64,000 nucleotides of DNA from Schmidtea nova. Taxonomy: Eukaryota. The stretch covers positions 42,222,001 through 42,286,000 of the forward strand of contig CM097883.1 in NCBI GenBank assembly GCA_044892505.1, in the 5' to 3' direction. Positions 1,018 to 54,700 of this stretch are shown here, one piece after another (position 1 is the stretch's first letter; each line of letters begins with the position of its first letter). The translations under genes were made by a program, and so were the position numbers. The notes under the pieces were generated by a model. That model worked only from the letters and a program-made list of their open reading frames with translations. It did no database searches and had not been told where the DNA came from.

Positions 1018-1124
1018 TCAATTCCAAATTTTCAAAGTACTATCCCAGGAACCGGTACACAGAGCTTCTCCGTTTTTCGACACCCCCAAACAGCTGACAC
1101 GATTATCATGGCTTGCTAGTACAC
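1018..1124 (-). CDS. GNB1: Gbeta coding exon 7 (last)
   Basis: [34 protein letters not shown]-stop; follows a 48-nt intron (1125-1172). Confidence 0.95.
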
Positions 1125-32899: not shown

Positions 32900-34100
32900 G
32901 GTATAAGTATACAATAGGGGGGCCACTTTTTTTTAATTAAATTAAATAAATTTTAAATTATAATAAATTATTAATTTAATAAAAAGAGTATAATAAAATA
33001 CTTATATATAGGGAAGACTATTAAGTCAGTTTTTATTTAAGTTAACGTTACACAACACTTAAATCATATCGTTGTCTTATTTGATCAATCAATATATCAA
33101 ACGCTCGCTCATTTTGACAAAACCTTCTTCTCCACATGAATTCGTCGAGGTACGAAGGAATGAAGCTACATCGTGTCCCAAACATATACTTAAATTTTCG
33201 TTTACACAACGCCCACGAACCTTCTATTCCGTTGGTGTTAACGCCGGTAACGGGATCAATGAAGTGTTCCGAGTGATTCACCCACTGGTGTACATACGGT
33301 CCCAATTTAGCTAAAGGTGTAGGGGCATTTGGGTCTCGTCTGGGACCACCAGTATAAGTAGAGAATTCATCAGTCCAAATAGTCGTTCCCGGGAGTACAA
33401 CACGCGAAAAAATTGGAAATATTTCTTGTTGAGTCCTATTATAAACGAACTCGAAGTGTACATTCTTCGTAGTACAGTCTATAATTCCGAAAACCCAACC
33501 ACTGCGTGCATTCCCTCTCGGTTCTCCGCGATTATGCATCAAATTCATAAATTTCGATTCATCCGCTTGCACGATATGATCAACTCCACCAAATAGTAAA
33601 GGCTGAGAAACCAACTTCCAACTGGCAATATCTCTAAAATACTGGTACCATTGAATGATAGTTTTTTTTGAAATATTAGTAAAAAGCTGAACTTGTTTAA
33701 CAGAGCATTCCGCGCCCCAAAAATACATTAGTAGGAAAAGATCACGAATATGTAATTTGGAATTACAAAAAAAACTCCCGGTTGTAATTGTTTGTTTGTT
33801 GCGATGCGGATTTACGTGTGACCGACTACGACAAACAAATATATATTCATTTACTACTTTTGAATCTTTTACAAGTTTCATAATGCGTCCGCAGTTTGAG
33901 CAGGTGGGATCGGCTCGTAGCAAACCTACTCTTTGGAAATGTCTTATTAAAGACAGTGTGTCACGCGAAAGTTCATATATTTGTTGTAAATTCATGGCTT
34001 ATGATATATTTTAAAATTTAATTGATTATATTTATATTTATATATTTAAATTTATTTAATTTAATTAAAAAAAGTGGCCCCCCTATTGTATACTTATACC
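32900..34100 (-). mobile_element. Merlin (IS1595/ISXO2-like) DNA transposon, apparently intact
   Basis: ~50-bp TIRs starting GGTATAAGTATACAATAGGGGGGCCACTTTT (one indel); perfect 8-bp TSD GATTAGCT (32892-32899, 34101-34108); single uninterrupted ORF. Confidence 0.96.
33048..33995 (-). CDS. Merlin/ISXO2-like DDE transposase, 315 aa
   Basis: CSNC zinc ribbon, HTH, VQADES (D), IWTDEFSTY (D), VNHSEHF.DP.TGVNTNGIEGSW (E), YLDEFMWRR. Confidence 0.95.
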   Translation of the reverse strand: MNLQQIYELSRDTLSLIRHFQRVGLLRADPTCSNCGRIMKLVKDSKVVNEYIFVCRSRSHVNPHRNKQTITTGSFFCNSKLHIRDLFLLMYFWGAECSVKQVQLFTNISKKTIIQWYQYFRDIASWKLVSQPLLFGGVDHIVQADESKFMNLMHNRGEPRGNARSGWVFGIIDCTTKNVHFEFVYNRTQQEIFPIFSRVVLPGTTIWTDEFSTYTGGPRRDPNAPTPLAKLGPYVHQWVNHSEHFIDPVTGVNTNGIEGSWALCKRKFKYMFGTRCSFIPSYLDEFMWRRRFCQNERAFDILIDQIRQRYDLSVV

Positions 34101-34790: not shown

Positions 34791-35365
34791 TAGCTAACGC
34801 TATGCAGAAGTAGAATTTTTTTGTGCTTCAGGGCTGAATAATTATATTATTAGAGGTAAGTACGTTTTTTTATAATTTACTATAGACAATATCAAACAAT
34901 TATTGTCACTTATGAGGCGCCAAATTTTTATTTTGTCCGGGCGCCGTTCAAGCTAGAGCGGGCCCTGTAAGTTTTTTTATTTATTTTTTTGTTTGTTATG
35001 AATGTATATTGTCAACTACAAGTTCTTCATTATTTGAATGTTTATTAAGTTTAAATACAATATTAATTACGTATTTTTTACAATAGATTCAACGATTTTT
35101 TAGTTTTTGACCTTTTCAACGTTTTCTTCAGGCATCCGCTTAATCTTAATCAAAAAGTGCTTCCGAATTGTTACAAGTAAGTAATTTTTTAAAATTTCTT
35201 ATTGTTGCATATACATACTCAGATTTAATCAAAGAATCACGCAACGTGTAGATTATCCGCCAATTTATCTACATCCTGTATATTAGAATTGTTTTTAAAT
35301 TCAATATTCAATATTTTATGATTAAAACTAGGTTATATATTTTTTTAGTTTTCGGCTTTTAGATG

Positions 35366-37590
35366 CTTCCCAAAAAACTCCGGTTTTCAAAATCGCATGC
35401 GACAGGCAACGAGGGAAGTAGAACTTGAAAAACAACGAGGCAACATTATAAAGTTCTTGATATCCAAGAATGATTCATCGGCACCTTCAGAACCACACAC
35501 GTCACCTGACAAGATCACTCAGAATATTTTAAAAGATATTTCTGAATCTACAATTCCGATATCTGAAATCAACCTAAAGGATGTATCTGAGGCACCTGAA
35601 AAAGATGAAATTGCATTAACAACAGAAGATTCTGTTAATTCAGAAAATGCATCAGCATCATCACCAGATTCTCTAAACTCTGATGATTTCCACATAATCG
35701 ACACATTTGATAATACAGCTAATATTCCATCTGTACTTTCTTGTAACGACATCGGCTATTTAGAGTTTGACAAGATATCACAACGTTTGATAATTTCCCA
35801 ACGACTCAAAGACGAATTGGTAGAGCGTGGATCATCTGCATTTCAAAAGAAAAATGGTCCATTTGAATTTCGCGATGGACGTTCAATGCATTCATCTTGG
35901 TTCACCCGCCGGCTGGCTAATGGAGATGAGATAAATCGAACATGGTTGCTCTTTTCCCCATTAAAAGTTGAGCATATTGCTTCTGTTGCCTATTATTTTC
36001 AAAGTCACTTAACAATCAGCGCTCTGGACTTACGTTGCCAGAAGGTTTCAACAAATGGAGAAAGCCAGAAAAAATGTCTGAACATGAAAATAGTCCAAAC
36101 CATGGCGCTTTATTTACTGCCTGGAAAGAAGCGGAGTGACGGATTATGTCGGGTAAGGGAATCGATGCAGAATTGCAAGCCCAAATACAAAATGAAAAAC
36201 AAAAATGGCGAGATGTTCTGAAACGCTTACTTAGTTGAGTAAATTTTTAGCATTTAAATTTGGCATTGCGAGGCCATGCAGAGAGTTCTAACGTTGGAAA
36301 TTTTCTTGCTACTCTGAAACTTTTAGCTGAGTATGATCCTTTACTTTCTAACCACCTTGATCATGCCAGACAAAATCCGGGATCTGTATCATGCTTGTCA
36401 CCACAAACCCAAAATGAATTTATTGGCTTACTAGCGTCGAAAGTAAGAAATAAATTACTAAATGACATCAAGAGAAACAAATACTATGCTATTTTGTTTG
36501 ACAGCACTACAGATCAAGCTCACCGCGAACAGTTATCACGCGTGATAAGGTATGTCGATGTTGATTTTTCAAACAAAACTGTGACTATTAAGGAATCATT
36601 TCTGAGCTTTATTGAGCTACATGCTAAAGATGCAGCCACTCTTGAACATGTTATTGTTGACACCCTTGAAGCCGATAATTTACGTCTGGATGACTGCAGG
36701 TCGCAATGTTATGACAATGCTGCTGTAATGAGTGGGCATATATCTGGGCTTCAACAAAGGATTTGCAATAGAAATCCTCGCGCAATATTTGTGAATTGCA
36801 ACAATCATAGCCATAACTTGGCAGGTATGCACTCAGCTAAGCAGGATACTGTTGCTGTTACATTTTTGGTACAATCGAGAGCATTTACCTTTATTTCTCA
36901 TGTTCCACACTTCGATGGAACGAGCTTAAAAATGTAATCAGCAACACTGTTAAGCGAGAATGTGAGACCAGATGGAGTGCTAGAGCAGATGCGGTCAAGG
37001 CTGTGCATAATGAAGTAAACGAAATTGTAGGGTTACTCGAAAAATTGTCAGATGATAACAGCCAGACTCAGGACACAAGGGCTGATGCCGAAAGATTGCT
37101 AATTTGGCATCAAATTCTCGGTAAAATTGACCGAGTCCAAAAACGTTTAAAGGACCCAACAGTAAACTTCGGGGAAGCAGCATCAGATCTGCAATCTTTG
37201 GAACTTCATCTCAATGAAGTGAGATCAGAATTATACGAAGAAGCCATTCAGAAAGCAAAGGATATGTGCAGTAAATGGGGAATTGCAGTAGAAAGCCGAG
37301 TCAGGCGAAGAAGACGAATGGCGGGAGAAATGGCACGAGATGCGGGACTTTCTTCTGAAGAAAATATTAACAGAATAATGAAAAGTATTATTGATCGCTT
37401 AAAGGCAAAATTTCAAAAAATTCAAACGACTTCAAGACTTTAATTTCAAATTTGGCTTTCTGCTTAATATTAATAATTTATTAAGCATGAAAAATGTCGA
37501 TTTGGAAGAAAAATGTTTGAATTTAGCAAGCTTTTATGACAGCGACGTAAATGGGACGGAGTTGTTCAACGAAATTTGCGATACTAAAAT
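35366..37590 (+). pseudogene. hAT transposase (ZMYM1/TTF-zinc-finger type), decayed
   Basis: RTWLLFSP, LALRGH, FDSTTDQAHREQLS, QCYDNAAVMSG, CNNHSHNL, TRWSAR, RRMAGEMARD, DVNGTELFNEI across frames. Confidence 0.9.
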
Positions 37591-38060
37591 AACAAATAAC
37601 AAATTTGTTTTTGGTTCAAATTTTCTCTGAACTCAATCTACGAACCTTTTTCAAAATATCGGGAGTGTTATATTACCAGAAATTTAAAGATAAATTACCC
37701 TATTAGCTATTTTTTTATTTTAATTTTGAAAAAACTTACGTCTGGATTTTTCGGGGGCAGAAGAAAAAATCAAGATTTCTATGATCCTTAACAAAAAATA
37801 GTTTCTAAATTTCATTCAATAAATAATATATGTAAATAATTTTTTTACTTTGTTTTTTCGGCACGGCACGCATTAATGTATTTTATATTAATTTATACCG
37901 AAAAAATGTTTTGTTTAACGAGATTTTCGCGTTACGAGCAACATTTATGAACGAATTATGCTCGTTATGCGAGGTTCCACTGTATAATAAAATATATAAA
38001 AATATATAATAATAAAATAATATTTTAAAAAGTAAACAATAAATATTGTTTATCACTACA

Positions 38061-38396
38061 TTAAAAATAAATTTTTCTGGCTTTTACTGCCGCAAATGTA
38101 TCAATGACATCATCAAAATTAATACAATCAAGAGTGTCGCGTTCCTCGCTTAAGAGTGCAAGACTATCCAAACGTTCTTGACCTATAGATGCCCGTAGAT
38201 AGGATAGTATTAATTTCAATTTTCTGAAAAAGCGCTCACAGCTTGCAATTGATACCGCAATCGTTAATAAAATTTGCAGCGCAATTCTTAAACTCGGAAA
38301 GACATCCTCACCATACAATACTATAAACTTCAACAAATCAACTGGCGATGATAGCGAAGTATCACATCTTTGCTGGTGTGTTGGTTTGATGGACAA
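38061..38396 (-). pseudogene. hAT C-terminal dimerisation domain, inverted relative to the 35.4-37.6 kb body
   Basis: VFPSLRIALQILLTIAVSIASCERFFRKLKLILSYLRASIGQERLDSLALLS...FAAVKARK. Confidence 0.9.
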
Positions 38397-38758
38397 CTGA
38401 GATCATTAAGATTTTATATGTTAGGGTGATCTCGCCAACATAAAAACATTCCCCCGCTGACACCCATGATGTATCCCTAACTACTCATCATGTTGGTGCT
38501 GTGTCAACGTTGTGAAATGACAAGGCAGGTGAGCAACCTTGCGGCTACTATTCCCTTGTTTATTCACGGGTCCACCACTACCGATAGAAGGTGTCTGTGG
38601 ATTTCTTTCGGTCCCACTTATGCTCTTTCCTTTTGCTCTAGGGTAATTTAATTTCAGCGCCTCTGCAGTTTTAGATGAATCCGGGTTTTTAGTTACATTC
38701 AATTCTCAGACATTCCACAAACAAACAAGACAAGACAAATCATTCGTTTACAATACAT

Positions 38759-39358
38759 TTATTTATAGTTTAATAACACTGACGGTCTAATCACATTTAG
38801 GAGTTCTTGTTCAGATAGACCACTGAGCAAGTCTACTTCTATTCCTAGGCGATCCGCATACGCACGTCGCTCTCTCCGCTTTTTCGATCCGAGGCGATTC
38901 CTTCTCTTCGTTCGTTTTGAGCCTGCTGGAGTTCTCGTTGTCGACTCGATCGTCGTGATTGCGACTGCATCTGTTTCCGTTTGGGTACTCGTAGTTACCG
39001 ATATCGAGTCCACCCATCGGTTAAAAGTGCTTGCCCGGATCACTGGGTGCAATTGCTCGGTAATAAATTCCTGGGTCGATACCCTCAAGTAGTTCGAGAG
39101 CTCCATCTTTAGTGCTGCTACCTCTCTAGCTTGTTCGTCGACTGTTCGTTCCGCCCGGTATCTGGCTTGTAGTATGGCCTTAACCCGCTCTGGGTTAAAC
39201 CACGTGGTTTTAATCCGCTGATGCTCGTCATTTAACTGTCTTAAACGATTCTCCAAAACTCGTGAACGCGCCTTATGTTCTCGCGCCTTTTGCTTGTACT
39301 CTCTATCTTTGGTTTCGTTCATGTCTGTAAATATAACCTCAATTATGGTATATGTCAT
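38759..39358 (-). CDS. Orphan protein, 199 aa, N-terminal coiled coil and basic C-terminal patch
   Basis: Uninterrupted, GC-richer ORF; stop overlaps AATAAA (38758-38763); RSRVLENRLRQLNDE heptads; KRTKRRNRLGSKKRRERR NLS-like stretch. Confidence 0.6.
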   Translation of the reverse strand: MTYTIIEVIFTDMNETKDREYKQKAREHKARSRVLENRLRQLNDEHQRIKTTWFNPERVKAILQARYRAERTVDEQAREVAALKMELSNYLRVSTQEFITEQLHPVIRASTFNRWVDSISVTTSTQTETDAVAITTIESTTRTPAGSKRTKRRNRLGSKKRRERRAYADRLGIEVDLLSGLSEQELLNVIRPSVLLNYK

Positions 39359-39510
39359 TTGTCCGGTCTTTCAGTCATCCTTTCGTTATTAAACAACTAT
39401 ACCACATCATCATGATATTCTCATACGCTCGAAACCAAAACAAGACCATTCTCACACAAATGCATTTATTTTTATATTTACAACAAACATTCTTTCTCGG
39501 GCTGTGTCAA

Positions 39511-40146
39511 TCAACTGAATGCTCGCAATTCCTGGTCGGCAGGATTCTCGTCGCGACGAATTCCGCTTTCCAAATACATCTCTGGAGCTGGGTTCCAACT
39601 CAACTTATCTCTGTAGGTAAACACCTCCCAGAGGCGAAGCTCCTTGGGCTCGGGGTGTTGATCTAATGACACGCTTCCTGGCGCGTTGGAGTAGGCGAAG
39701 ACTTCCTCAGTGTAGCGACACCGAGGCCTGTCTAGCAGCGTGTATCCTAGTCGATATAGAGCCCTTCCCGTCAACATTCCAGTGCTCAATAACCAACGGG
39801 GTCGTTTCTGCTCATCGAGGAATTGGTAGAACCATCCGTCGGTTCTTGGGTCGGCAGGGGCTAAGGTGGACGTCCAATCGGTGTCTCCTTCCCATCGCAG
39901 TTGTATAGTGAAGGCGCAGGCCGGAATATCGGCGGCTGCACTCATATGATTTCTTATCCACCGGCGTAAGTGTCGGCGTGCAATTTCGCTAATTCGGCGG
40001 GGGGCTTCCGTTTCTCCCTCGATGGTGGGGTTCCTCTTTGGCCGGATGACGGAGCGGGTACGCCGTCTTTTCCGGATGACATAATCCTCCACTTTCATAT
40101 GTCGCGAGTCGATCAGATCCTTTTGATATTTCTCGATTTTTATCAT
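39511..40146 (-). CDS. Orphan protein, 211 aa
   Basis: Uninterrupted ORF with GTATAAATA ~55 nt upstream (40201-40209) and AATAAA at 39465-39470; basic N-terminus RKRRRTR, Trp-rich core. Confidence 0.6.
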   Translation of the reverse strand: MIKIEKYQKDLIDSRHMKVEDYVIRKRRRTRSVIRPKRNPTIEGETEAPRRISEIARRHLRRWIRNHMSAAADIPACAFTIQLRWEGDTDWTSTLAPADPRTDGWFYQFLDEQKRPRWLLSTGMLTGRALYRLGYTLLDRPRCRYTEEVFAYSNAPGSVSLDQHPEPKELRLWEVFTYRDKLSWNPAPEMYLESGIRRDENPADQELRAFS

Positions 40147-41126
40147 GTGACTGAATACAAGAGCTAGGTTAATGTGATAGATTTGTCGGGTGAGTGTAAT
40201 TATTTATACCCGTCGACCTACTCGACTTAATGGTAAAACGCTGTAGGCCTTGGTAGATCGGTTTTCATTTTTACTAAACCAGAGACGGTAATGTAGTATG
40301 GGTCGTGCATTATGGTTTAGTGTAGTAGACTATTCTACTCTGTATTTTTATTCAACTAGTTAACCACGCTCAATTGATTTTGGTCGTTACTGGATTAGAT
40401 TTATTTTTGTTGTTCATCAACTATGTACACACGACAATTTCTCACTAGGAGACGCTATTACCAACTACCAAATTTACATTTGTTTTCCATTCATCACACC
40501 CATTCTCTCAGTCATGCTCTATGCCTGGACAACACGATTGCCTATTCATTTTAGTTTTACATCAGCCACACTCAGTCACTCGATATTTTTATTTGAAGAA
40601 CATCCTCGTTAACTAACGATGGTCATGTCATAAGGGGAATATCGACAATCCCTTACTCAAGTTGGGTTGATGCTTCTGGTATGATCGTTAACTAATTGGT
40701 GGGGTTGACCTTTTGTGCCCTTCGAGGGTCGCATGTAGGTGTTGGAATACCTGGTTGATTTATATCTCGGACCCAAACACTTTGGTCTCTGAACTCACAT
40801 GACTTATGTATGGTGTATTTCTACCCTCGTCAGCGCTCAATTTATCCGACTTGATGTTGTTTATCGTGATACATATCCTCTATACAAGGCTATCGCTACT
40901 TTAATCGACTTTACGAACGCTGGATACCCTATTGATCTATTAACAAGCCTGTTACGTGTACTCATTTACTCGATGTCGTCGTGACAGATAATGCATCCTT
41001 CGATTACTTTTACTCATACTGATGTTACGAGGGTATCGGACATCCTATGTGCATTTGTCCCCCTTCCGTTTACTAAATTTTTAGGAAACCTATGGTCCCG
41101 CCGCATCAGCACCTCACATGAAAATG

Positions 41127-41750
41127 TGTTGCGCTGAGAGGCCCAAGAATCCGTCAGGCTGTCAGGCCTCCGGAAAACCTTATTGATTTTAAGATAGTTA
41201 TAATTATGAGGGTTTAAAGTAACAATATAACACACAACAATTACCTTTTATTTTTCCTTCAAGTTGGATTTACAATGTTCTCAGTGCTCAACTGCAAGTT
41301 ACACTTGGTAAAATAACATTGACAAATACTGATTTGACTTCAGTATTTATACTCAACCGGTGTTGTTGGTTAGCCAATCAGCATCGAGTATGTGTGTATG
41401 TTTGCTTCATTTTTTCATGTTGTCGGCTTTTTGCTGCCTAACTTAACTCACTGATTTATTTGTTTAATCATGCGGTAAGTTTTTCTTTGTCATCAATTTA
41501 TTTTATTTTATTTTTGTTTTAGATCTTCGGTGACATCCGCCCACGCGCTGTCATATTCAGATTTTATCTGCTTCGCATGAGTGAGTTTTTGAGTTTTATT
41601 TTTGTTTTGATTAATACCTTATTTCTTTTAGATGTTGCCGCTTATTTGCTACTTTTTTAGCTGGTAATTTGTTTTATTGTTATTTTGTGTAGCTTTATTT
41701 TATTGATTGCATATTATTTTCAGATGCTGCTCGATTTGGCTGGCCCAACA
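41127..41750 (-). mobile_element. LTR-like family B copy 1 (624 bp, TGTTG...CAACA)
   Basis: Starts TGTTGGGCCAGCCAA at 41750 and ends GCGCAACA at 41127. CCAAT box 41374-41378, GTATAAATA 41344-41352, AATAAA. Sequence after the end resembles that after copy 2. Confidence 0.8.
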
Positions 41751-42726
41751 TCTTGTTATTGTGGGGACAATTGGGGTGCCTGCTTATGTAATGTAGGGTT
41801 TACAAAGATATTAATGAAATTAAACAAGTTTCAAACAAATTTATATCAACAATTATATTATTATAAAAATTGTATTTAGAGAAAATTAACAATCCAAAAC
41901 CACGAAAAGTTACTTTAATATTGGTGAGATATTTCTTTTGACTCTTTGAATACTCTTTTAAGATCAGCTCTCCGACAATTAATTTCCGACAATTATTAGT
42001 TTTGTAATTTTTTTTAAAAAAATCAATTTTCTTATTTTGTATATTTTACTATAGTTTCATTCTATAGTAATTTAAATATTTAAATTCTAAATTTAAATAT
42101 TTTAACCATATTATAAGTAAATTATAATAATTAAAATACTTAAAATAATTAAAATACACCAAAGGGGGGTACAATGCCTTTACAATAGTAGTAACAGATA
42201 ATAATAAAGATTAACAACTCATTACAATATATATATATATATATATTCAATGAAAACTGAAAACTGTAAAAATAATTTAACAAGATATGACCTAACTATA
42301 ACAAGAAAACTCATTTTATTTATAGAGCTCGTTGCAAAAAATGAAATTTTTGTTGAGAGCGCTCAGACTCGAGTTTAGAAATAATTTTCAGCTGATTATG
42401 TCCCAAATAAATTTTTTCAGCTCAAGCTTTCTCTATTTTATTTTAGACAGAAATGCTCGAGCTAGCTTAATAGGGTAATTTGAGCTGTCAGCTCTAGTTA
42501 TATTTTTGTGCCTTCGCAAAAGTTTTGAAATATTATGTTTAAAAATGCGCAATAAATAGAAATACATAAAATTCGTTACGAATTCGAACTATTAAACGAA
42601 TCATAACATTTTTCGGAACGACTACTAAAATGGTACAATGTAATAAATTCCGGGATTTTATTTGTAAAATACTGATTAGCCTCTAGAAGGCGTTAATTGT
42701 TGGTCGTTCATCTTTTCCGGTGCTTA

Positions 42727-42837
42727 TCATGTGGCTTCGTACCGCCGGCACCGTTGACCAAACTTCTTAGTGAGCTCGTCATTTCGGAGCTTGAATCGGC
42801 TCATGCGCTTATACAGCTTTTCCAAGGATTTCTCCAT
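42727..42837 (-). CDS. Small spliced orphan gene (36 aa) with TATA box and 5'UTR intron
   Basis: TATATAAG at ~43056-43064; GAG|GTAAG donor at 43004; TTTCAG acceptor ending at 42845; AAAAATGG start context; MEKSLEKLYKRMSRFKLRNDELTKKFGQRCRRYEAT. Confidence 0.5.
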   Translation of the reverse strand: MEKSLEKLYKRMSRFKLRNDELTKKFGQRCRRYEAT

Positions 42838-43257
42838 TTTTAAACTGAAATAAAATTAAATTATAAAAATTTAATAATGATGCAATAATGAACCCATAAA
42901 CTATATACAATATGTACAATCAAACAGACAAAGCAAACCACTCAACCAAAATTCAAAAGCAAAACACAACAAACAATAAATATTATAAACGAAAAATCTC
43001 TTACCTCGGGTGCAAAATTTTGATAAAAAGTAAAATTGGTAAACTTGGTAATTTACTTATATAAACTGGAGTGGGACCTTCTGGACCACTAATACCTGAC
43101 TAAGTAATCGCGCGACAACCCCCGTTGGTTAAGGTCTCGTAAATAGATATAATTAAATCTTTGAAAACGTGAGTTTTTGGTATTGCTATCATCGTTTCGT
43201 ATTGTAATATTATTGACAACAGGCAACTACAAAAAAAATTATAATATGAGATTACTG

Positions 43258-44190
43258 TTACGCTTGGTGGTGTAATTGATCAATATAGGTCGTTGTATCG
43301 TATATATGAATTTTGCAATAGATAGCATTTTTTCTGGCATCTGTCCAAGCAGGATTAATAATATTATCCAATTCGTTTCCCAGTATAATTCTTGGTAATC
43401 CGGCAGTTATGATACCTGTTCCACATTTAACATTAGAGAAGTGGTGAATTTAGTGTCACATAAATTGATGAGCTCCTCGGGTTCCCATTTATGTAATGGT
43501 AAATCATCAATAACGATTCCGTCGTATTGTTTCTTTTCTGGCCCGAGCTTTTCAAAATCTCGCCCAATACTTATGTGTAAAGGGCTCGAAAAATGTGACA
43601 GTGCATAATTTGTTTTACCGATTCCAGTAGCCCCGACCATAACGACAGCGCGCTCTTCAAATTTACAGAATGGTAAACACCAGTTTCGTTATACTGTGGC
43701 TTAGTAACGATACCAATTTTCCTATTGACATAAATATTAATTATTTGAGCAAAATAATAAATAAATATGTCACTTTATTAAGCATGATTCTAATTTTTGG
43801 CTCATTCGAATAATGTCTAGTGGTTTCTCATTCTCAACCATAGCAAGGCCTTCTGATATCGCATTAGACTCTAAAAACTTTGTCAAAAAATCCTCATCGG
43901 CTAATGGACGTTTACCGTATTCCCAAAAGTGGCCATTATCCACAGTAGACAATTTATTACGTCTTTATACTCAAATCCGAATACATAATTAAACTCATAT
44001 TTTTTATGAATTGCCCAGTACGTTGACGAATTGTTCAATATTAGCATGCATTCCATGTGGTCATGACCTCCCGAACTTATCTCTTGTTTCATGAGCACAT
44101 ATTTGCAAGTTTCTTTTAATATTACTTGCAAACTATCTTTACGTCGTAAATAATCCGACGTAGGGATCGAAATAGTTTTAATCGCTTTCT
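43258..44190 (-). pseudogene. rep: Endogenous CRESS-DNA-virus-like Rep (HUH endonuclease plus SF3 helicase), gemini/genomovirus-like, frameshifted
   Basis: KYVLMKQEISSGGHDHMECML (motif II context, HDH at 44057-44065); YC..DNGHFWEYG (degenerate motif III); Walker A GATGIGKT (43611-43634); Walker B DGIVIDD; NVKCGTGIITAGLPRIILGN (B'/C); stop at 43258; at least 3 frameshifts. Confidence 0.9.
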
Positions 44191-44199
44191 GTTAAGAGC

Positions 44200-44961
44200 T
44201 GCTCGTTTTGCTTTGTCTTCGTTATCTCCATATCCTGTTTGGACTCGTCCTCCTACAACTGCTGTTTCTCCGCCAGACAATTGACTGGGAATATGAGGCC
44301 CATTTTCCTGAGAAACTGGTCGGTGAACACCACTTTGCAGTTGATTCTGGGGCAATTTGTTAGAGCTAGCCATTGTAACCTCTGCCATATCAGTATGAGT
44401 AATTCCGGCGCTAGATATAGCTGGCTTTCTCCGCATATTGCTTGCACATTATTTGGAGTATTGTCGAATACCTTCCGATGTTTAAGTGAATCAATATCTC
44501 TTGGAGAAGTTTCTCCAAATCCACCCAGTTCGTCGATCCGAGTAAGATTTTTGTATTTCTTTTTCTCGGAGTTCCGCATTCTGGGGCCGGGTCATCATTA
44601 TAACGTCTATCAATTGGGCTTCCAGCATTGCATTGATACCTTCGCTTATTTTGTGCTCCAGCTCTAGCCTGTTGACCGAATACAACTTTGTATTAATAAA
44701 CATTACGAAATTGATATACGGTCACCTTTTTGGCATCACCATGTTCGGGTTTATCCCTCGGATCTGGGCCACGAGCCTCGGGGGTATGGAATTGAGTATC
44801 GTTTCCGACTCCCTCAGAATCTGGAAGGGGGATGCGAGATAATATTTCGTCCACTGAGTCGTCAGTCCAATCGTCCGGAAATTGAGACACCATTGTGAAC
44901 TTGCTTCCCGTATATTCATTATTTCTTCGTCCTTTAGCTTTATCCTTTCCTCGTCATTCAT
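44200..44961 (-). pseudogene. Frameshifted orphan ORF immediately upstream of Rep
   Basis: Overlapping minus-strand ORF pieces (44722-44961, 44693-44893, 44491-44703, 44253-44579, 44122-44436) in GC-richer DNA; no family recognised. Confidence 0.45.
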
Positions 44962-45507
44962 TGTCAGTCATTGGTGAATGTTAAAATGACATTCTGTTGC
45001 AGTATAAATACAGGGGTGAGAGAGAGAAAATCATTTACATGTCTTGCAATTTTGCTTACCCGGATAGGCCAATCATACGCTCATGCACACAACAATGCAA
45101 AAATAATAAAAATAAAAAAAGCTTCTCTCGGACCGATTTCATTTCTCCCGGCGAGAAATAGCTAATCACCAATTCCATAATTCTCCTTTTTAATTCCCCA
45201 ATAAGTTCCTTCTCCGACGACATGATGACCTTTAATAAAAATACAGCATTAATCTCATCTCCGCTTTCTGACCCGATATCTTAAACTTTTACAGGTGGAC
45301 TCGCGTTTCCACGACGGCAACTCTACTACCCCTCTCGATTTCCTCTAAATTTGTCTCAGCTCATTTACTCTACTTTCTCATTCTCTGTATTTTTTATCTA
45401 GACTCACCCCCACCCCAGAAAAATATATAATAAGTTGACCATAATAAAAATAATTTAATAAACTATCATAGACAAGAATCAAACTCAGAATTTCAAATAC
45501 ATAACAT

Positions 45508-46032
45508 TTATTTTACGCTATGACAGGTCAAGAACAACTACGATAAGTCCGAAATGAACCAGTTCTCCGCATTTCCCGATCGACACTTATCATTCCTCGA
45601 AATTTGGACTATATGGAGACTCGGTAGGGCATGTGCTGGAGTAAGGTCAAGCATGATCCGACCCAGACTCCATAACTCTTCCTGGGGAATCGTCCCCAAT
45701 TAGTAAATTCGATTACGCCCTGGGATCTCGGTAGGTGTTTCTACAAAGTATGATGGTAGATCGGCTGGGTACTTCCTATCGACGTCGATTGACCACGTGC
45801 TACTCCCGTGCCATATTATCGTGTCGGGACTGTCTCGCAATAAGCTAAATGGCGGGACAATCCCATCTTTTTCGAACACCTACTGATGTTCCGATAGAAT
45901 TTCGCCTGCCAAATTTGGGGGTATATTTTTTACGGGTACTGCCATCACCCAAAAATTATCTTCTGACTTCGGCCCTTCCTCGTAAAATGAATCAACTCGA
46001 TGGCCATTTATGCTTATACAGATTCGCTCCAT
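45508..46032 (-). pseudogene. Orphan 175-codon ORF relic with three in-frame stops
   Basis: MERICISINGHRVDSFYEEGPKSEDNFWVMAV...; single frame with no indels; final TAA overlaps AATAAA (45507-45512). Not in the ORF track. Confidence 0.55.
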
Positions 46033-46068
46033 CTCTTTAATTTATTTACTACAATATACAATATGAGG

Positions 46069-46141
<73 letters not shown>

Positions 46142-48752
46142 CAAGATTTATTTACATAATTTGGTACCAAAATAGATATTTTATGCGTATGTAAATTTAA
46201 ACTTGGAAGTTTTGTTTCATGTTTTTCATTTTTATATCTTAAATTTATGTTATTTATCTATGGAGTTATTACGAAAATTTAAATGCCGGTATAGTTTTAG
46301 TATCTCTACCGCCGCAACATTCACTATTTAATAACTCATGGGATAAAATTCGCTCTTCACTTGGTCTCAATTGCACTTCAACTTCAAATCTTGGTTGAAA
46401 TATTAGAGTGGTTATTTAATTTACTTTTTGTGTGATCGTGAATAGTTCTACTATATTCTACCGGGCGACCCCCATGTCTCTCGTACTCGAGTGCACTTCG
46501 AATAATACTTGACTTATCGCTCTACGATACTTAGGGGTGATTGGCATATCAAGTGGATTTTCTCGTTTCGGATTTTTAATAGACAACCCATTCATCAGCA
46601 ATATATAGTGCCTCCTCTGAAAATTTTGAGTGACCACTTCACAAAAATTCGATTAATTCTATACCTCGGGTTTACTCGTTCTATTGGACAGAATCGTGAC
46701 AAAATTGTCCAAATCTCTCGCCAGAAAATTTACAGCAAATTCGTGTGGTTGTTTTTTTTATGCAGGCGCTCTATGGATTAGGTTCGAAAGATTTTCTATC
46801 GCTTCGACTGATTTAGGCATAAGTTAGAATATGCTTTACCCTTGGTTTTCTAAAAAGTGGGTATACATTGAGTCTACTACTGCGCCGATTTTACTGAACA
46901 TCGCCCAATATTTTCATCACCAGGAATCTACGGCACTCAGCTTCCGCCAAGCTACAAATTTTTCATTGCACACACATCCAAAAAATGCATGGATGATTGC
47001 TCAGATAGAGAATTATTTTTTTATCTGATTTTTCTTTTTCAATATATTAGTCGAATTGAATGAAATGAGGTGCACGGAGAATTGAGTGCAAATCGTTAAC
47101 TATTGCAAAATTCAAAAATTTACAAATAAAGAGCAAAATAATTAAAAAAAATTAAAAATCAAAGGTTTTACGGGCGCAAATAGGTATGGGTGGATGCCAA
47201 ATGATAAAATGGATTCAAATATAATGATATCACATCAATGGGCGTCCTCAGAAATAGATATTAAAAAAGTACAAACTTATTAAAAACTTAATTTACTAAT
47301 GGAAACCCTGAGTCGTCAACAAAATAATTAAATTACTTTAGGCGAATTTTTGAGATAATGAAAAACCCAAGCAGTGTGGAAAATCAAAAATTGAAAGAAA
47401 AAAATTATTATAAACAGATGATAATTTTGCTTGATTAAGACTTGGTACTAGTATAAAATGACATTGTTTGGCTAACCTGAGCGCTTCCTTATATAGTAAA
47501 ATCAGCGCTTAGGCAGCCAATCAGAATTCAGCTAATATTTTATTGGTCAAATGACCCGTTTTTATACATTATTTTATTTTATTTTATTATTTTCTCTATT
47601 AATTTCATTTATTTTCTCTATTAATTTCATTTATTTTCTCTAATTCTTTTTATTTCCTCATTTCTACTTAAATTTCACATCTTAATCACTTTTTTTCCCT
47701 CGATTTTTCATTTTATTTTTGTTTTAATTTTACTCTTTTGTTAACGATTATTTTCCAACTTTTTAATATTATTTTAATGTTTCTTGTTAACTTTTATCGT
47801 TTCCTAATTAATCATTTAATTCTCCTATTATTTGTTACTGTACTAACCCAACAAATGTTTCTACATAATTTTTTATAATTTGTAAAAACTGAAGCTTTTG
47901 GTTTAAAAGTTTATTTTTACTTTTCTTAAATTGTGTTAAATGTCCCTCATGAGTTTTATAAAATGTTAGGTAGGGGTCGGAACTTAGGATCTGACAAAAT
48001 GGGCATACATGGTATTTTTCCTGAAATTATGTTATCTCATAATATTTTTTTCCCATTACTTCGTGACATTTTGACGAAAAAACTTGGTTATTGCAACAGT
48101 TAAAGTATAAGATACGTTAAAGGTATTTTTAAATTAATTTTTTTATTTTCAAAATGACAAAACGTTAGTATTAACTTTAACAACAGATCTGCTTTATTAC
48201 TATCTTGATTTTAAAATAAACTATAGGTTAAAAATTTATTATTATAAAAAAATAATTTATTATTCAACAAATATATATTATTCTATTATCTAAATAATTA
48301 TTATTTTATGAATTAATATTTAACTGTTATATCAAATTCAAAATAAAATAATTTGTTAAAAAAGCAATCATGATTATTTTTTGGTTTCGCCTTTGATCTC
48401 TTTTTATTTAATAGCAATAATTTACATAATTATACAACTATAGATCAATATATTTTGTTGTTAGGTACCATTGTTGTTAGTGTATCTAACAGCAACATTT
48501 TTTAATCTATAGTCATATAATTTTTTATTTAAAATAAATTTACATTTAACAGTTGGGCATTAGATTTGCATTTTTGAGCATTCTATAGTTATAAATATTA
48601 ATTTATAGTTTAATGGTTTATTATAATTTACAGACTGTTTGTAACGATAATCTGTTATCCTTCGTTCTACACTTGGTTTACCTTTTGAAAACATATATTT
48701 GAAATGTATAAATTATGTTATCTTAACAAAATACAAAAACCTCACTTAGCAT

Positions 48753-49429: not shown

Positions 49430-50099
49430 CTCTTCGCAGTGTTAGGTGGTGCGGTGTACCAGCGTTAACCAAATGGAAGGGGAGAGGTTGGACATAGAGA
49501 AGGCAGAGATAGATTTCCTTTTGACAATAATAAGAACATGAGGCTTACCGATTTTTTTGATCAAGTTAAACTTCGCAAACCCAGCGCAGTAAAAATCTGA
49601 GACAGCTTTGGAAAGTGAATAAGCCAAGATAATATACAGATAGAGATCATACAATCACAAATATAACTAAGGTAACTCCCATACATTTATTTTCTTTGCG
49701 ACATGGTAGAGTGAAATAGTGCGTTAATGCCACCTAAGGATCTGTAGAAAAATTCAAAAATTTACAAATAAAGAGCAAAATAATTAAAAAAAATTAAAAA
49801 TCAAAGGTTTTACGGGCGCAAATAGGTATGGGTGGATGCCAAATGATAAAATGGATTCAAATATAATGATATCACATCAATGGGCGTCCTCAGAAATAGA
49901 TATTAAAAAAGTACAAACTTATTAAAAACTTAATTTACTAATGGAAACCCAGAGTCGTCAACAAAATAATTAAATTACTTTAGGCGAATTTTTGAGATAA
50001 TGAAAAACCCAAGCAGTGTGGGAAATCAAAGATTGAAAAAAAATAATTAAATTGCTTGGGATAATTCAATTGTATAAAATCCTCGAACTAAAGGAAAAT

Positions 50100-53000
50100 C
50101 TGGGAGATATTAAAACTCAATTTATGAATTTATCTATGATGGTCGATGAAAGTCGGCTGTCAAAATCTTATTTTTTTATTGGACGTGAGAAGTTAAATTC
50201 ATCTAATTAATTAATTATATTGAAGGAAATTACTATAAAAGCGGAAAGCAAACTCTAAAATTTTCCAGTTCGCAATCAAAGTCTTTAAAAATGATAAAGC
50301 TAGTTATTTAGATTGATCAGAGTAATTAGAGACTAGATGAGTAAAGTGTGATCAAACAACTTATCCAGAGGAACATATAGAAAGCGTACCAGAAAAAAAC
50401 GATTTCCCGATGAGCTACTTACTTTGAAATGTTGTTAAAATTTAAAGTGTTATAGTGGCAACGATTGCAGTGAAATTTAAATAAATTTATTGTATTTGGG
50501 TATTGTTGTATTTTGAAACAGAGAGCATATCGAGTCAGAGCTTTGATACTGACTTTCATAAAAAACTACCTGAAAACGTAAGTATTCTAAGCTATCCTAA
50601 CCAGGGCCGTGTCTGGGTATATGGCCGCCTGCGTGCTAGTATGCATGGCCGCCCTTTGAGATAACATCAAAATCAAAGAAAAAAATCAAATTTTCATTCT
50701 TAATTTTTTTATTATACTTATATATCTAATGTACATGTACATATTACCATTGAATATAAAACATTAATATGTTTGGCACATCTATAAATCTATGATATTA
50801 CAATCAAAAATTTACTCTACGCGATTTTTTAGAGGCAAATTCTTCAATCGCCCCTTCAATATTTAAGGAATCAGCAATTTCACTTTCAATTGCAATAATT
50901 GATATATTACTGAGACGTTCTTGAGTCATTGAAGTTCTCAGGTGGTTTTTGATTATTTTTAATTTTGAAAAACTTCGCTCTCCAGATGCAACAGATACTG
51001 GAACTGTCAGTAAAAGTTTTAAACTTGTGACGACATTTGGAAAAGAATTCTCCAAGTTGTATTTGTATTAAAACTTTATGAGTTCTTCGGGCTGCTTTCT
51101 GTCTTTTATGATAATTTTTAGAGAAATTAACTCTTGATATAATTCTACGCCACTAATATCACAAGATTCACCATCTTTAAATTTATTATGGAGATCGAAA
51201 CAACTTTTTTTTATTTCCTCATGTTCCATATCAATAAATTTGTATAGAAATCCAAAACATTGTTCGAAATTTGACAAAGTTTCAAAACGGGTGGTAAGAG
51301 ATGAAATATCTGTATCTAGTATTACATAGAAAAAATTAATTTGAAAATGTTCTTTTGGAGTAAATTGAATATCTTCATCTCCTTCATAGCTAAATTGTTT
51401 TCGGTGATGTCGGCGACGTACACTAATTTCAGCAGGAAAATCCGGTTCTGTTTCAAGTGCTTTACAAAGTTCATTAGAAATCTGCAAATAATTTTCGAAA
51501 CTTTCGTCATTTCTAATGCTTTTGAAAAATTTCAAAACTTCCTTAATTGATTCAGCACACGAACTGATATTCCAAGAAACTTTCTACATCATTTTGCTAA
51601 TAAAATCTACCTTTTCCAAGATTTCGTACCATATTATTATTGAAGAAATAAATTTATAAGATTTAGGTTTCATTGCCAAACATTCAGCTTCATGTCGAAC
51701 TGTTGGCATTGAAGATTCCTCAGCTATTTCTATAAGGCTGTCATAAATTTCACCTAATTCATTTCGCAATGGTCTAATTGCTTTAATTCTTGCTTCCCAT
51801 CGAGTTTCACTAACTTGTTTCAATGTTAAAGATTTTACATTTTTCTTTAAAACTTGCCATCTAAATGGTGATCCACTGTAAAAGTTGTATATTGCAGATA
51901 CATTACTGAAAAAATCCACCGTTGAAAACGAAACATTAGCTGCATCATTAATGGCCAAATTTAATGTATGCGCGTTGCATGGCATAAACAGAGCTCGTGG
52001 ATAATTTTCCAAAATTCGCTTTTGCAATCCTTTATGTTTTCCGGACATATTAGACCCATCATCGTATCCCTGGCCCCTCATATCGTTAATATTTAATTCA
52101 AGATAGTTTAACTTTTGAATTAAGAAGTCGTAAAAAGATTCTCCAGTACAATTTTCAGCTTGATAAAATCCAATGAAATTTTCTCTTACTTCAACTTCAT
52201 AATTTTTAATATCTACATACCTAATAATCATTGTAACTTGCTCGACATGTCCAGTGTCCGGTGTACAGTCCAAAATGACTGAAAAATATTTTGCCTCTTT
52301 TATTGATGTTAATATATATTTTTGAATTTGGGTTGCAAGGATAGTGATTATTTCATTTTGAAAGCGATTTCCCAGGTAATGTGGCATGTGGTTCTTTAAA
52401 GCGATTGGTTCTTGTACGCGTTTTATGTGGTCTGCCATTATATCATCAAATTTTCCTATCATTTCAATTGCTTTCAGAAAATTTCCATTATTTTTTTCGT
52501 ACAATTTGCTGGAAGAACCTCTAAAAGCTAAACACTGTCCTGCTAGAAATTGTACCACAGATATCATGCGCCTGACAATTTGACACCATCGCTTTTTCTC
52601 GGCGTCATAATACCGTTGCATATTCTTATCAATTGTAGTTTTTCTTTTTAAATTTAATTCCAATTTTTTCCAACAGGTGCAATTTTCGATGTGCAGCGAT
52701 GTTTTTTCGTGACGAGATAAGTTGTCAGATATGTGTTGCCAATCGTTGAAGCCTTCATTAACTAATTTTATTTCTTGTTTGCCAAATAATTTACAACAGA
52801 AGCAAAATGTGGCATCATTTTTTGGAGAATAGATTAACCACTCACGATTAAATTTTTCACCATTTGGCAGTTTTCTATAGAAATAAACCTTTGAAAATGA
52901 TCTTCCAAATTCATTTAGTGGATATGTAGATTGTATATTTTGAATAGGGCCTTTTTCAATTAAAATATCCAGCATTTTATTAATAAGTGTTCAAGGCCAG

Positions 53001-54700
53001 CAAGCTGGATCATTTAGTTCTATACACATAGCAAAATATTCTTCATCAATTTCAGTGATATCGTCGATATTTGTAACTGCAATATCTCCTATTTCATCAT
53101 TACTACTAATATTGTCATTATCATTTGTATTTTCGGCAGATAATTCATTTTCATTGGAAAAAAATTCACTGCTTGGATTTGCTTGGCTACTGCAAGCATT
53201 TTGCATTTCTGGAGGTTTTTCCAAATATTTGGTTAGTGAACCAAAGATTTTTTTAGCAACATGTTGTTTTTCTTCTCGCTTTCTTTTATACTGTGCTCCA
53301 GACAATCTTTTCGTTTTTCTTCCAGTCATTCTTATGCCTTTTACTAAAATGTTTAAAAATATCAATAACGATTTATAATGAAATTAATTTATTATAAAAT
53401 TAAATTCATTACCTTTTTCAACCTTTTGTAACAAAGCGTTGGGTGAGGCGGTGAGGGAATCTGCCCAAGCGCTTTCCGAGTTCAAATAGGGTTTTATTGA
53501 CACGCAGCTGAGACGCTTGCCGTGCTATAGACAGACAGGTAAATCACATATTATAACACACACACACGCGCGCTCCCAACTTACCTACGCCATAGAGCGC
53601 AATGATAATGATTACAATTGACGAATTGACGACAACACTCAACTATTTGACAATTTACTTTAATTATATATGACTATGACTATATATTAACATTCTTATT
53701 TTGCTTTTTAATTTTTTTTTGTTTTTCTGGTCGTCAGGCCGCCTTTTAATTTGGCCGCCTGTGTGCGGCGCACGTAATGAACGCCGGTCAGGCACGGCCC
53801 TGATCCTAACCAGGAATTACCGTTCATAGTCAACACTGAACAATATTTCAAGAAGAAAACAACGAAAAACAACCCATAACTTTCTTTTTAAAGAAAATTA
53901 AAAATACTCCACATTTGATAGATAGTTATTTGTATTACACGATACGATCAGACACTTTCAATATTTACTTAAAGGAAATGAATTCGAAGTGTACACTGAT
54001 CACAACCCGTTAAGAAATGCTATTAATAAAAACTCTTCACCGAGACAAATAAGACAATTAAATTATATTTGACAATTTAATTGCAAAATAAAATATATAG
54101 CGGGATCAGCTAATATAAGTGCAAGAATCGAAACCCATATTAATGTACTAAATTTGCTACCAATCATAGAACTAGAAAACTCCAAAACAAAACAAAACGA
54201 TAACAGAGTTTCCAAAGATTAACTCACTCAAACTGAAGGAATAAACGGGATCTGGTATGACACATCAAACCACAACTATGAAAAAATCATCTTACCACCA
54301 GAATTCCGTGAACACTACCTACAAAAATACCACAATACCTATCACTCATGAAGCATAGCCACATACTAACTTTTACAAACTAAAGTCGTTTGGCCTTTAA
54401 TGATAAAAACAAGCAAACAAACTAAAACCAGCAAACAAGATCGCAAAACAAATCCATGCCTATAAAAGAAATTTCTGCAGCAAAGAAATGCAGAAAGTTA
54501 GAACAAAATTGGTTCACACGATATGGTTGCCCAAAAACACTAATCAGCGATCAATTTGTAATAAATACAATATCACAAAAATTTGAACTGCATATAACCC
54601 ACAAACAAAAAGAAAAGTGAAAAATTGCATTGATCAATAAAACAATCAATCAGAACCAAAAAAAATTACCAGAAATTTTGACAAGCAAAAAATTTTGTAC
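50100..54700 (+). pseudogene. Gypsy/Ty3 pol relic (RT-RNase H-integrase) split by a hAT insertion
   Basis: LLYLGIV (RT, ~50490) before the hAT; IRHFQYLLKGNEFEVYTDHNPL and IKYIAGSANI (RNase H) and PPEFREHLLQKYH (integrase N-terminus) after it. Confidence 0.7.
50602..53802 (-). mobile_element. hAT transposon (ZMYM1/TTF type), full length, 3201 bp, transposase with ~3 frameshifts
   Basis: TIRs CAGGGCCGTG; perfect 8-bp TSD ATCCTAAC (50594-50601, 53803-53810); ORF pieces 52991-53332, 51584-52975, 51068-51535 and 50804-51055 (DCTPDT, QGYDDGSNM, PCNAHTLNL, ETRWEAR, ASGERSFSKLK). Confidence 0.97.

What the first reader, a model, noticed from the sequence alone, without database searches (positions are those of the whole stretch)
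38420..46070. Compact virus-like gene cluster: co-oriented orphan genes around a CRESS-type Rep and an LTR-like repeat
Seen: over ~7.6 kb the DNA is visibly GC-richer than the host and holds at least six minus-strand genes or relics (46032-45508, 44961-44200, Rep, 42837-42727, 40146-39511, 39358-38759). Several have their own TATA box, and three end with the same AAATAAATG poly(A) context (45507, 39465, 38758), two of them with the stop inside AATAAA. Known: this packing is typical of DNA viruses and virus-like elements, and a ~7.5-kb Rep-encoding planarian extrachromosomal virus-like element (PEVE, Girardia tigrina) has been described. Inference: this is an endogenised PEVE-like or new Rep-bearing element, or the accessory cargo of a giant LTR retroelement that captured a Rep. 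The LTR's outer flank (41751-42600) looks like unrelated TE DNA, so two adjacent insertions are also possible.
Basis: partly seen in the sequence, partly recalled or inferred. Interest (0 to 1): 0.85.

Follow-up and report, generated by a model that had tools for sequence, protein, structure and literature searches.

The report
Decayed planarian virus-like Rep gene cluster
This AT-rich animal genome holds an integrated, broken copy of the replication gene of a small DNA virus whose closest named relative is the planarian element PEVE, still preceded by an origin-like DNA hairpin; the orphan genes beside it cannot yet be tied to the same virus.

Summary
Region 38420-46070 has 0.386 GC against 0.291 for the rest of the window. 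It holds two intact minus-strand ORFs (211 and 199 aa), a broken Rep gene and two decayed orphan genes, all co-oriented.

Rep is a CRESS-type HUH endonuclease plus SF3 helicase. [quoted passage not shown] It carries 2 frameshifts and 5 in-frame stops.

New here: two adjacent hairpins lie 10 nt upstream of Rep's first ATG. The first carries TAATATTAC at its loop-stem junction, the layout of a CRESS replication origin.

PEVE's other hallmarks were not found: no second helicase and no bounding inverted repeats. No capsid family matched either. No LTR partner, RT, integrase or gag was found.

All non-Rep ORFs are orphans. The part with Rep is uniformly decayed, while the two downstream ORFs are intact and separated from it by 0.8 kb of AT-rich DNA. 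So one element versus two adjacent insertions stays open.

Verdict: an endogenous viral element of the PEVE lineage, a new member of a known kind. An integrated PEVE relative (PIVE) is already catalogued in Schmidtea mediterranea.

The parts
43258..44170 (-). Rep pseudogene (CRESS-type HUH endonuclease + SF3 helicase, PEVE lineage), given as one part. Broken by 2 frameshifts and 5 in-frame stops. The first in-frame ATG is at 44092-44090. Length is about 278 codons, against 272 aa for PEVE Rep.
   Evidence: phmmer of the helicase piece gave 280 hits at E<=1e-3 and PEVE Rep at 1.5e-12. tblastn outer bounds are 43261-44170, and PEVE Rep residues 53-261 match at E 1e-30. Every open piece aligns in order to PEVE Rep or to a 30-relative profile. 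That profile hits solved CRESS Rep structures at 7.6e-11. Break counts come and the frames.
44102..44167 (+). Origin-like double hairpin just upstream of Rep's first ATG. Hairpin 1 (44102-44132) has a 9-bp perfect stem and a 13-nt loop, with TAATATTAC at 44117-44125 across the loop / 3'-arm junction. Hairpin 2 (44135-44167) has a 12-bp stem and a 9-nt loop.
   Evidence: DNA fold of -15.3 kcal/mol, z -3.95, matched by 0 of 200 shuffles. Only 5 loci in 64 kb carry a perfect 9-bp stem that is not pure A/T. The 9-mer class alone is at chance level in the window, 7 seen against 6.6 expected.
44253..44961 (-). Decayed orphan gene upstream of Rep, with at least 1 in-frame stop and 1 frameshift. The reading path is inferred from codon-position GC only.
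   Evidence: no Pfam, PHROG or local hit
45508..46032 (-). Decayed orphan gene in a single frame with 2-3 in-frame stops. It ends in the AAATAAATG context.
   Evidence: no family hit
42727..42837 (-). 36-aa mini-ORF downstream of Rep. A TATA-like box lies at 43063 and an AATAAA at 42662. Unverified.
41801..42600 (.). AT-rich spacer (0.231 GC) between the two GC-raised blocks. It contains a TA run and AT palindromes. It has no clear terminal inverted repeats and only weak similarity to other AT-rich places in the window.
40147..41750 (-). It holds TATA-like boxes at 41351 and 40208 and several AATAAA. No partner copy exists in the window.
39511..40146 (-). Intact orphan ORF of 211 aa at 0.53 GC, with a basic Arg/Lys-rich N-terminal stretch. 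A TATA box lies 62 nt upstream and AAATAAATG lies 40 nt after the stop.
   Evidence: No hit in Pfam, the 5.8-billion-protein search, PDB or PHROGs. The AF2 model is unusable at pLDDT 33.
38759..39358 (-). Intact orphan ORF of 199 aa. Two long helices are predicted (residues 3-119), then a disordered Ser/Thr-rich stretch and a basic C-terminal part. The stop codon lies inside AATAAA.
   Evidence: No sequence hit. AF2 pLDDT is 66, and no fold match reached E<=0.001.
46073..46138 (.). (TA)33 microsatellite marking the upper edge of the GC-raised DNA.
38064..38402 (-). Neighbour, not part of the cluster: a hAT transposase C-terminal fragment abutting the lower edge. The rest of that transposase is absent.
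   Evidence: Dimer_Tnp_hAT at 1.6e-7; tblastn map

Best explanation
At least the upper block (about 42.6-46.07 kb) is an endogenous viral element. It is an integrated, decayed piece of a small Rep-encoding DNA virus-like element of the lineage known from the planarian element PEVE.

In the living ancestor, Rep would have bound and nicked the origin hairpin at the TAATATT/AC site through its HUH endonuclease domain. It would then have driven rolling-circle replication with its SF3 helicase. This mechanism is inferred from family knowledge.

Here Rep is a pseudogene with 2 frameshifts and 5 in-frame stops, and the two co-oriented genes upstream of it are decayed to a similar degree. The locus is therefore a fossil and cannot replicate.

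The lower block (38.4-41.8 kb) holds two intact orphan genes with their own TATA and AATAAA / GT-rich signals. I think it slightly more likely that this block is a separate, younger insertion or a selectively kept unit than a part of the same integration event. This is the weakest step.
For: Shown:
- The Rep helicase piece finds 280 proteins at E<=1e-3. The only named one among the 20 looked up is NCBI PEVE Rep, at 1.5e-12.
- PEVE Rep is the best full-length match and aligns over residues 53-261 at E 1e-30.
- All four open pieces align collinearly, with piecewise E-values of 4e-22, 4e-14, 2e-10 and 0.006 to PEVE-cluster proteins. Against the relatives' profile they give 3e-7, 1.9e-5 and 1.3e-9.
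- The HUH motif, Walker A, Walker B and motif C residues are present.
- Relatives carry Viral_Rep and Gemini_AL1_M, and their profile hits solved CRESS Reps.
- The double hairpin with TAATATTAC lies 10 nt upstream of Rep's first ATG.
- Integration context: hAT, Merlin-like and mariner-like pieces lie around the region and host-like AT-rich DNA lies on both sides.

For two units rather than one:
- The three upper genes carry at least 8 breaks in about 2.1 kb, while the two lower ORFs carry none in 1.24 kb. The Poisson chance of that under equal decay is about 0.01 (my estimate).
- A 0.8-kb AT-rich spacer separates the blocks.
- Rep is 0.35 GC, against 0.46-0.53 for the lower ORFs.
Against: - No non-Rep ORF has any homologue, so nothing ties the upstream relics to Rep except adjacency, orientation, composition and similar decay.
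- All six ORFs are co-oriented.
- The AAATAAATG plus TCTTGT 3'-end context occurs in both blocks.
- The total length of 7.65 kb is close to the roughly 7.5 kb I recall for PEVE. Together with the two points above, this argues for one element.
- The hairpin's 3' arm overlaps codons that align with the N-terminal conserved region of longer relatives, so its place is not cleanly intergenic.
- The host species was not identified.
Confidence: 0.5

Rival explanations
1. The whole 38420-46070 stretch is one integrated PEVE-like element of about 7.6 kb. A later AT-rich insertion sits at 41.8-42.6 kb. The two lower ORFs stay intact because the host, or the element family, still uses them.
For: All ORFs share one orientation. 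GC is raised across both blocks. The AAATAAATG / GT-rich 3'-end context is shared by genes of both blocks. The minus strand is similarly A-rich at 38.5-42.0 and 44.0-45.0 kb. The size is near the roughly 7.5 kb I recall for PEVE.
Against: The decay contrast has a chance of about 0.01 under equal neutral decay. The spacer shows no terminal inverted repeats or other sign of being an insertion. No bounding inverted repeats and no second helicase were found. The blocks share no similarity at protein level.
Confidence: 0.35
2. The cluster is internal cargo of a giant LTR retroelement that captured a Rep gene, with 40.2-41.75 kb as one of its LTRs.
For: The stretch begins with TG on the minus strand. 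It holds a TATA-like box followed by AATAAA signals, as a U3-R-U5 would.
Against: There is no second copy of the stretch in 64 kb. No RT, integrase, protease or gag family was found in any open frame of 45 aa or more in the cluster, 75 aa or more in the window, or 50 aa or more in 10-kb flanks. I saw no primer-binding site or polypurine tract (by eye). No tRNA gene is present.
Confidence: 0.06
3. The region is an accidental pile-up of three or more unrelated transposon fragments, one of which happens to be a Rep relic.
For: The window is rich in transposon debris: four hAT pieces, a Merlin-like element and a mariner-like ORF. The dinucleotide signature does not separate the pieces from the host.
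Against: No ORF of the cluster maps to any known transposon family. The upper block is contiguous GC-raised DNA with uniform orientation and uniform decay.
Confidence: 0.07

Closest known systems
[quoted passage not shown] 2002)
   Same: The Rep is of the same small, deep clade. It is 43-53% identical piece by piece and collinear over nearly the full length. The first in-frame ATG lies 4 codons from the position of PEVE's annotated start. A multi-gene unit of similar size is possible.
   Different: This copy is integrated and broken. No second, papillomavirus-E1-like helicase was found, and no inverted repeats around two unique regions. Those two defining features come from my own knowledge of the 2002 paper and from the domain names in Liu et al. 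2011, PMC3198968. Homology of the other ORFs could not be tested.
PIVE (integrated PEVE relative of Schmidtea mediterranea; Repbase 2008, cited in PMC3198968)
   Same: It is an integrated relative of PEVE in a planarian genome, so the kind of thing is already catalogued.
   Different: As described in PMC3198968, PIVE is recognised by a parvovirus-NS1 / E1-like protein and terminal inverted repeats. Neither is present here. Whether PIVE also holds a circovirus-type Rep or these orphan ORFs could not be checked with the tools at hand.
Endogenous CRESS-DNA virus Rep sequences in animal genomes (Liu et al. 2011, PMC3198968)
   Same: It is a degraded Rep with stops and frameshifts inside host repeat-rich DNA.
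   Different: Here an origin-like hairpin with the nonanucleotide survives next to Rep, and co-oriented orphan genes flank it. Most reported cases are isolated Rep fragments.
Circovirus / nanovirus / geminivirus Rep proteins with solved structures (for example PDB 7lar, 2hw0, 2hwt, 6h8o)
   Same: The domain order is the same, HUH endonuclease then SF3 helicase. The profile of the window's relatives matches 7lar over positions 7-301 at E 7.6e-11.
   Different: The relation is distant. The window's own pieces give no direct PDB hit and only sub-threshold Pfam hits.

Membership tests
CRESS-DNA virus Rep (HUH endonuclease + SF3 helicase) | HUH metal-binding motif in the N-terminal domain | tested here: met
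   An H-x-H-hydrophobic motif aligns with that of relatives (profile E 3e-7). H37 is nearly invariant in the 30-relative alignment.
CRESS-DNA virus Rep (HUH endonuclease + SF3 helicase) | Catalytic tyrosine motif (motif III) | tested here: inconclusive
   The invariant tyrosine column of the relatives is not covered by either flanking profile alignment. It cannot be read in one frame with the HUH motif.
CRESS-DNA virus Rep (HUH endonuclease + SF3 helicase) | SF3 helicase Walker A, Walker B and motif C | tested here: met
   G-x4-GKT, the acidic pair and the Asn-containing motif align with PEVE Rep and with the invariant columns of the relatives.
CRESS-DNA virus Rep (HUH endonuclease + SF3 helicase) | Relatives are recognised Rep proteins | tested here: met
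   Relatives carry Pfam Viral_Rep and Gemini_AL1_M. One is named NCBI PEVE Rep. Their profile hits solved Rep structures.
CRESS-DNA virus Rep (HUH endonuclease + SF3 helicase) | Uninterrupted reading frame | tested here: not met
   2 frameshifts and 5 in-frame stops
CRESS-DNA virus replicon | Origin stem-loop carrying a conserved nonanucleotide near the Rep gene | tested here: met
   The form is met: a 9-bp stem with TAATATTAC at the loop-stem junction, 10 nt from Rep's first ATG. Function is not testable here, and no iterons were seen.
CRESS-DNA virus replicon | Capsid gene | tested here: inconclusive
   No capsid family was found in any frame. The 211-aa ORF has a basic N-terminal stretch as many such capsids do, but its model is unusable at pLDDT 33.
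PEVE-type element | Circovirus-type Rep closest to PEVE Rep | tested here: met
PEVE-type element | Second helicase of papillomavirus-E1 / parvovirus-NS1 type | tested here: not met
   No PPV_E1_C, Parvo_NS1 or other helicase family was found in any open frame of the cluster, the window or the flanks.
PEVE-type element | Two unique regions flanked by inverted repeats | tested here: not met
   Only TA-microsatellite and AT palindromes appear among inverted repeats of 37800-46300.
PEVE-type element | Homology of the non-Rep genes and shared gene order | not tested
   This would need the PEVE record or its other proteins. Fetching them is barred here, and searches with the window's own two intact ORFs returned nothing.
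PEVE-type element | Extrachromosomal state | not testable with these tools
   In this assembly the cluster lies between host-like AT-rich DNA and transposon fragments.
LTR retroelement | Pair of long terminal repeats | tested here: not met
   No second copy of 40200-41750 exists in the window. A partner beyond the window cannot be excluded.
LTR retroelement | gag / protease / reverse transcriptase / integrase genes | tested here: not met
LTR retroelement | Primer-binding site and polypurine tract next to the LTR ends | tested here: inconclusive
   Inspected by eye only, and none was evident. No tRNA gene is present for comparison.

The most novel reading that the evidence does not exclude
The orphan genes are the so far unrecognised non-Rep gene set of the PEVE virus lineage. 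The two intact ones, a 211-aa protein with a basic N-terminus and a 199-aa long-helix protein with a basic tail, would then be kept by the host or belong to a still-circulating relative. That would give a first view of the structural or accessory genes of an unusually large, multi-gene CRESS-type lineage confined to flatworms.
Probability: 0.2. Interest if true: 0.6.

Novelty: new member of a known kind. Interest (0 to 1): 0.4.

Why it matters
PEVE is an odd, barely studied element, large for a Rep-encoding ssDNA-type replicon and known from one planarian species. A fossil copy of its type of Rep with the origin hairpin still in place shows three things. The lineage has entered a host germ line. 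It gives a second, independent sequence for dating and tracing the lineage. It also marks neighbouring orphan genes as candidates for the lineage's unknown proteins. If the intact ORFs prove to be expressed, the locus would be a candidate case of co-option. If not, this is one more endogenous CRESS Rep, which is a common kind of finding.

Tried and rejected
- Pfam, PHROGs and PDB sequence searches of every open piece of the cluster gave only sub-threshold noise. Examples are a Hermes DNA-binding domain at 0.005 and RNA_helicase at 0.15.
- Searches of 5.8 billion proteins with both intact ORFs gave nothing.
- AF2 of the 211-aa ORF was unusable. AF2 of the 199-aa ORF gave long helices with no significant viral fold match.
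- tblastx of the cluster against the window found no internal paralogy. blastp of the cluster ORFs against the 153 Rep relatives found nothing.
- TAATATTAC downstream of Rep at 43204-43212 has no stem-loop (z +1.1) and was rejected as an origin.
- The dinucleotide signature distances between segments lie within host noise and are uninformative.
- The spacer shows no terminal repeats. Rfam and tRNA scans were empty.
- The PEVE papers of 2002 are not held in the library.
- I considered an intron in Rep where the five stops cluster. I did not model it, because no tool predicts it and the relatives' lengths do not require it.

Full report
**What is there**

The window is AT-rich at 0.291 GC outside the finding. 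It is full of transposon debris:
- hAT pieces at 35349-37440 (+), 38064-38402 (-), 50807-53383 (-) and 58615-59906 (-)
- a Merlin/IS1595-like DDE gene at 33048-33995 (-)
- a mariner-type ORF
- host exons such as a G-protein beta subunit

Region 38420-46070 stands out at 0.386 GC. Eight of 15 inside 500-nt windows reach 0.40, against 1 of 105 outside. The rise comes in two blocks, 38420-41800 at 0.425 and 42601-46070 at 0.383. An AT-rich spacer at 0.231 separates them. The upper edge is a (TA)33 run at 46073. The lower edge abuts a lone hAT C-terminal fragment.

**Rep**

Pfam and PDB searches with the window's own Rep pieces gave only sub-threshold hits. A full HMMER scan of 1.84 billion representatives with the helicase piece gave 280 proteins at E<=1e-3. 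Most are 300-400 aa long and match at residues of about 180-260, which is the Rep architecture.

[quoted passage not shown] That is PEVE, at E 1.5e-12. In a local tblastn it is the best full-length match: residues 53-261, E 1e-30, outer bounds 43309-43949. Other Reps extend the match to 43261-44170.

Piece by piece, the window aligns in order with proteins of the PEVE cluster:

| Piece | Identity | E-value |
|---|---|---|
| Helicase | 45% | 4e-22 |
| Central | 43% | 4e-14 |
| C-terminal | 53% | 2e-10 |
| N-terminal | not recorded | 0.006 |

It also aligns in order with a profile of 30 relatives. The HUH motif, Walker A, Walker B and motif C are present. The catalytic-tyrosine column is not covered by the alignments.

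The relatives carry Viral_Rep and Gemini_AL1_M. Their profile matches solved circovirus and nanovirus Rep structures, 7lar at 7.6e-11. A search with PEVE Rep itself found one further close lineage, P0154, at 48% identity. That protein is about as far from the window's Rep as PEVE is. The clade is therefore small and deep.

**State of the genes (counts only)**

| Gene | Breaks |
|---|---|
| Rep | 2 frameshifts and 5 in-frame stops; the stops lie close together in one short AT-rich stretch and may be a single event; length is unchanged, about 278 codons against 272 aa for PEVE Rep |
| Gene upstream of Rep (44253-44961) | at least 1 in-frame stop and 1 frameshift, inferred from codon-position GC only |
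| Far-upstream gene (45508-46032) | 2-3 in-frame stops |
| 211-aa ORF and 199-aa ORF | none |

**New observation: an origin-like hairpin**

Two adjacent hairpins lie ten nucleotides upstream of Rep's first in-frame ATG (44092-44090). That ATG is 4 codons from the position matching PEVE's annotated start.
- Hairpin 1, 44102-44132, has a perfect 9-bp stem and a 13-nt loop. On the + strand it carries TAATATTAC at 44117-44125, across the loop / 3'-arm junction.
- Hairpin 2, 44135-44167, has a 12-bp stem.

The fold has z -3.95 and none of 200 shuffles does as well. Only five loci in 64 kb carry a perfect 9-bp stem that is not pure A/T. The nonanucleotide class alone is at chance level in this window, so it is the combination that counts.

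By established knowledge of CRESS replicons, Rep nicks such a loop between positions 7 and 8 to start rolling-circle replication. That role is inferred here, not shown. One caveat: the 3' arm overlaps codons that align with the N-terminal conserved region of longer relatives.

**The other ORFs**

All are orphans. There was no hit in Pfam, PHROGs or PDB, and for the two intact ORFs also none in the 5.8-billion-protein search. They also show no similarity to each other or to the Rep relatives. The two intact ORFs are unlikely to be chance, since an ORF of 199 codons or more arose in 4 of 2000 shuffles.
- The 211-aa protein has a basic N-terminal stretch. Its model is unusable.
- The 199-aa protein is predicted as two long helices plus a disordered, then basic, tail, with no significant fold match.

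Three genes end in the same AAATAAATG context, followed by a GT-rich TCTTGT-type stretch. That is the layout of an animal poly(A) site, and it occurs in both blocks.

**Tests of the proposed families**

For PEVE, the Rep criterion is met. No second (E1/NS1-like) helicase exists in any open frame of the cluster, the window or the flanks. No inverted repeats bound the region.

For an LTR retroelement, there is no partner for 40200-41750 and there are no retroelement genes.

The literature held here shows that an integrated PEVE relative, PIVE, is catalogued for Schmidtea mediterranea. PEVE itself had not been found integrated (PMC3198968).

**One element or two**

| For one element | For two units |
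|---|---|
| All ORFs share one orientation | At least 8 breaks in about 2.1 kb of the three upper genes, none in 1.24 kb of the lower ORFs (about 0.01 under equal neutral decay, my estimate) |
| Both blocks share the 3'-end context | An AT-rich spacer with no marks of being an insertion |
| Both blocks have raised GC and an A-rich coding strand | Rep at 0.35 GC against 0.46-0.53 for the lower ORFs |
| Total size is near PEVE's (my recollection) | |

I give a slight edge to two units, or to selective retention of the lower genes. The data at hand cannot decide.

**Limits**

The host species was not identified. I built no spliced or joined model.

- Fetching the PEVE record or its other proteins.
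- Looking up the contigs that encode the unnamed Rep relatives.
- Scanning viral or metagenome collections for loci related to the cluster.

1. One search used a 9-letter degenerate origin motif that I recalled from memory. I had first seen the exact 9-mer in the window's own sequence.
2. The script printed stop-to-stop open frames of the region. I used such piece bounds as query references. In my reasoning I also looked at where frames change. Break places could be inferred from these.

Noticed in passing
window 32900-34100: A Merlin/IS1595-like DNA transposon. A 315-aa DDE ORF at 33048-33995 (-), DDE_Tnp_IS1595 at 5.7e-14, is flanked by 84-nt inverted repeats at 32900-32983 and 34017-34100.
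   Followed up: partly
window 47107-47407 and 49749-50049: A 301-nt direct repeat, 98% identical, 2642 nt apart. The ends are sharp on both sides and no coding content was recognised between the copies. It could be a small terminal-repeat element or a local duplication.
   Followed up: partly
window 35349-37440 (+), 38064-38402 (-), 50807-53383 (-), 58615-59906 (-): Four hAT transposase copies or fragments, 26-41% identical to each other. The one at 50807-53383 is nearly complete, and the one at 38064-38402 is only a C-terminal stub next to the cluster.
   Followed up: yes
window about 1021-3234: Host exons of a G-protein beta subunit (WD40_Gbeta at 7e-39 for 1021-1329, minus strand). Three open frames match.
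   Followed up: no
window, places not determined (among the frames): Single open frames match a cathepsin propeptide (Inhibitor_I29, 9e-13), a mariner/Tc1-type transposase (DDE_3 at 7.5e-16; Transposase_1) and a TPR repeat (3e-6).
   Followed up: no
window 10382-10538 and 9979-10121: Long palindromes, 157 nt at 98% and 143 nt at 79% self-complementary, beside TA microsatellites.
   Followed up: no
protein P0002 (ENA metagenome contig of 1320 nt): A 199-aa predicted protein joins a stretch 55% identical to the window's Rep helicase piece with a PIF1-like helicase stretch. It may be a Rep relic next to a Helitron-type gene, or a chimeric call.
   Followed up: no
PEVE-cluster proteins P0006 and P0151 compared with window 44092-44090: In both PEVE and the window, the first Met of Rep lies just before the HUH motif. 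Longer relatives have a conserved stretch upstream of that point. In this clade the N-terminal motif may be encoded without an ATG or may be lost.
   Followed up: partly
window 41148-41757 compared with 55779-56385: A weak inverted similarity, 58% over 645 nt at E 2e-7 under permissive scoring, between the upstream part of the 'LTR-like' stretch and an AT-rich place 14 kb away. It is probably compositional.
   Followed up: no
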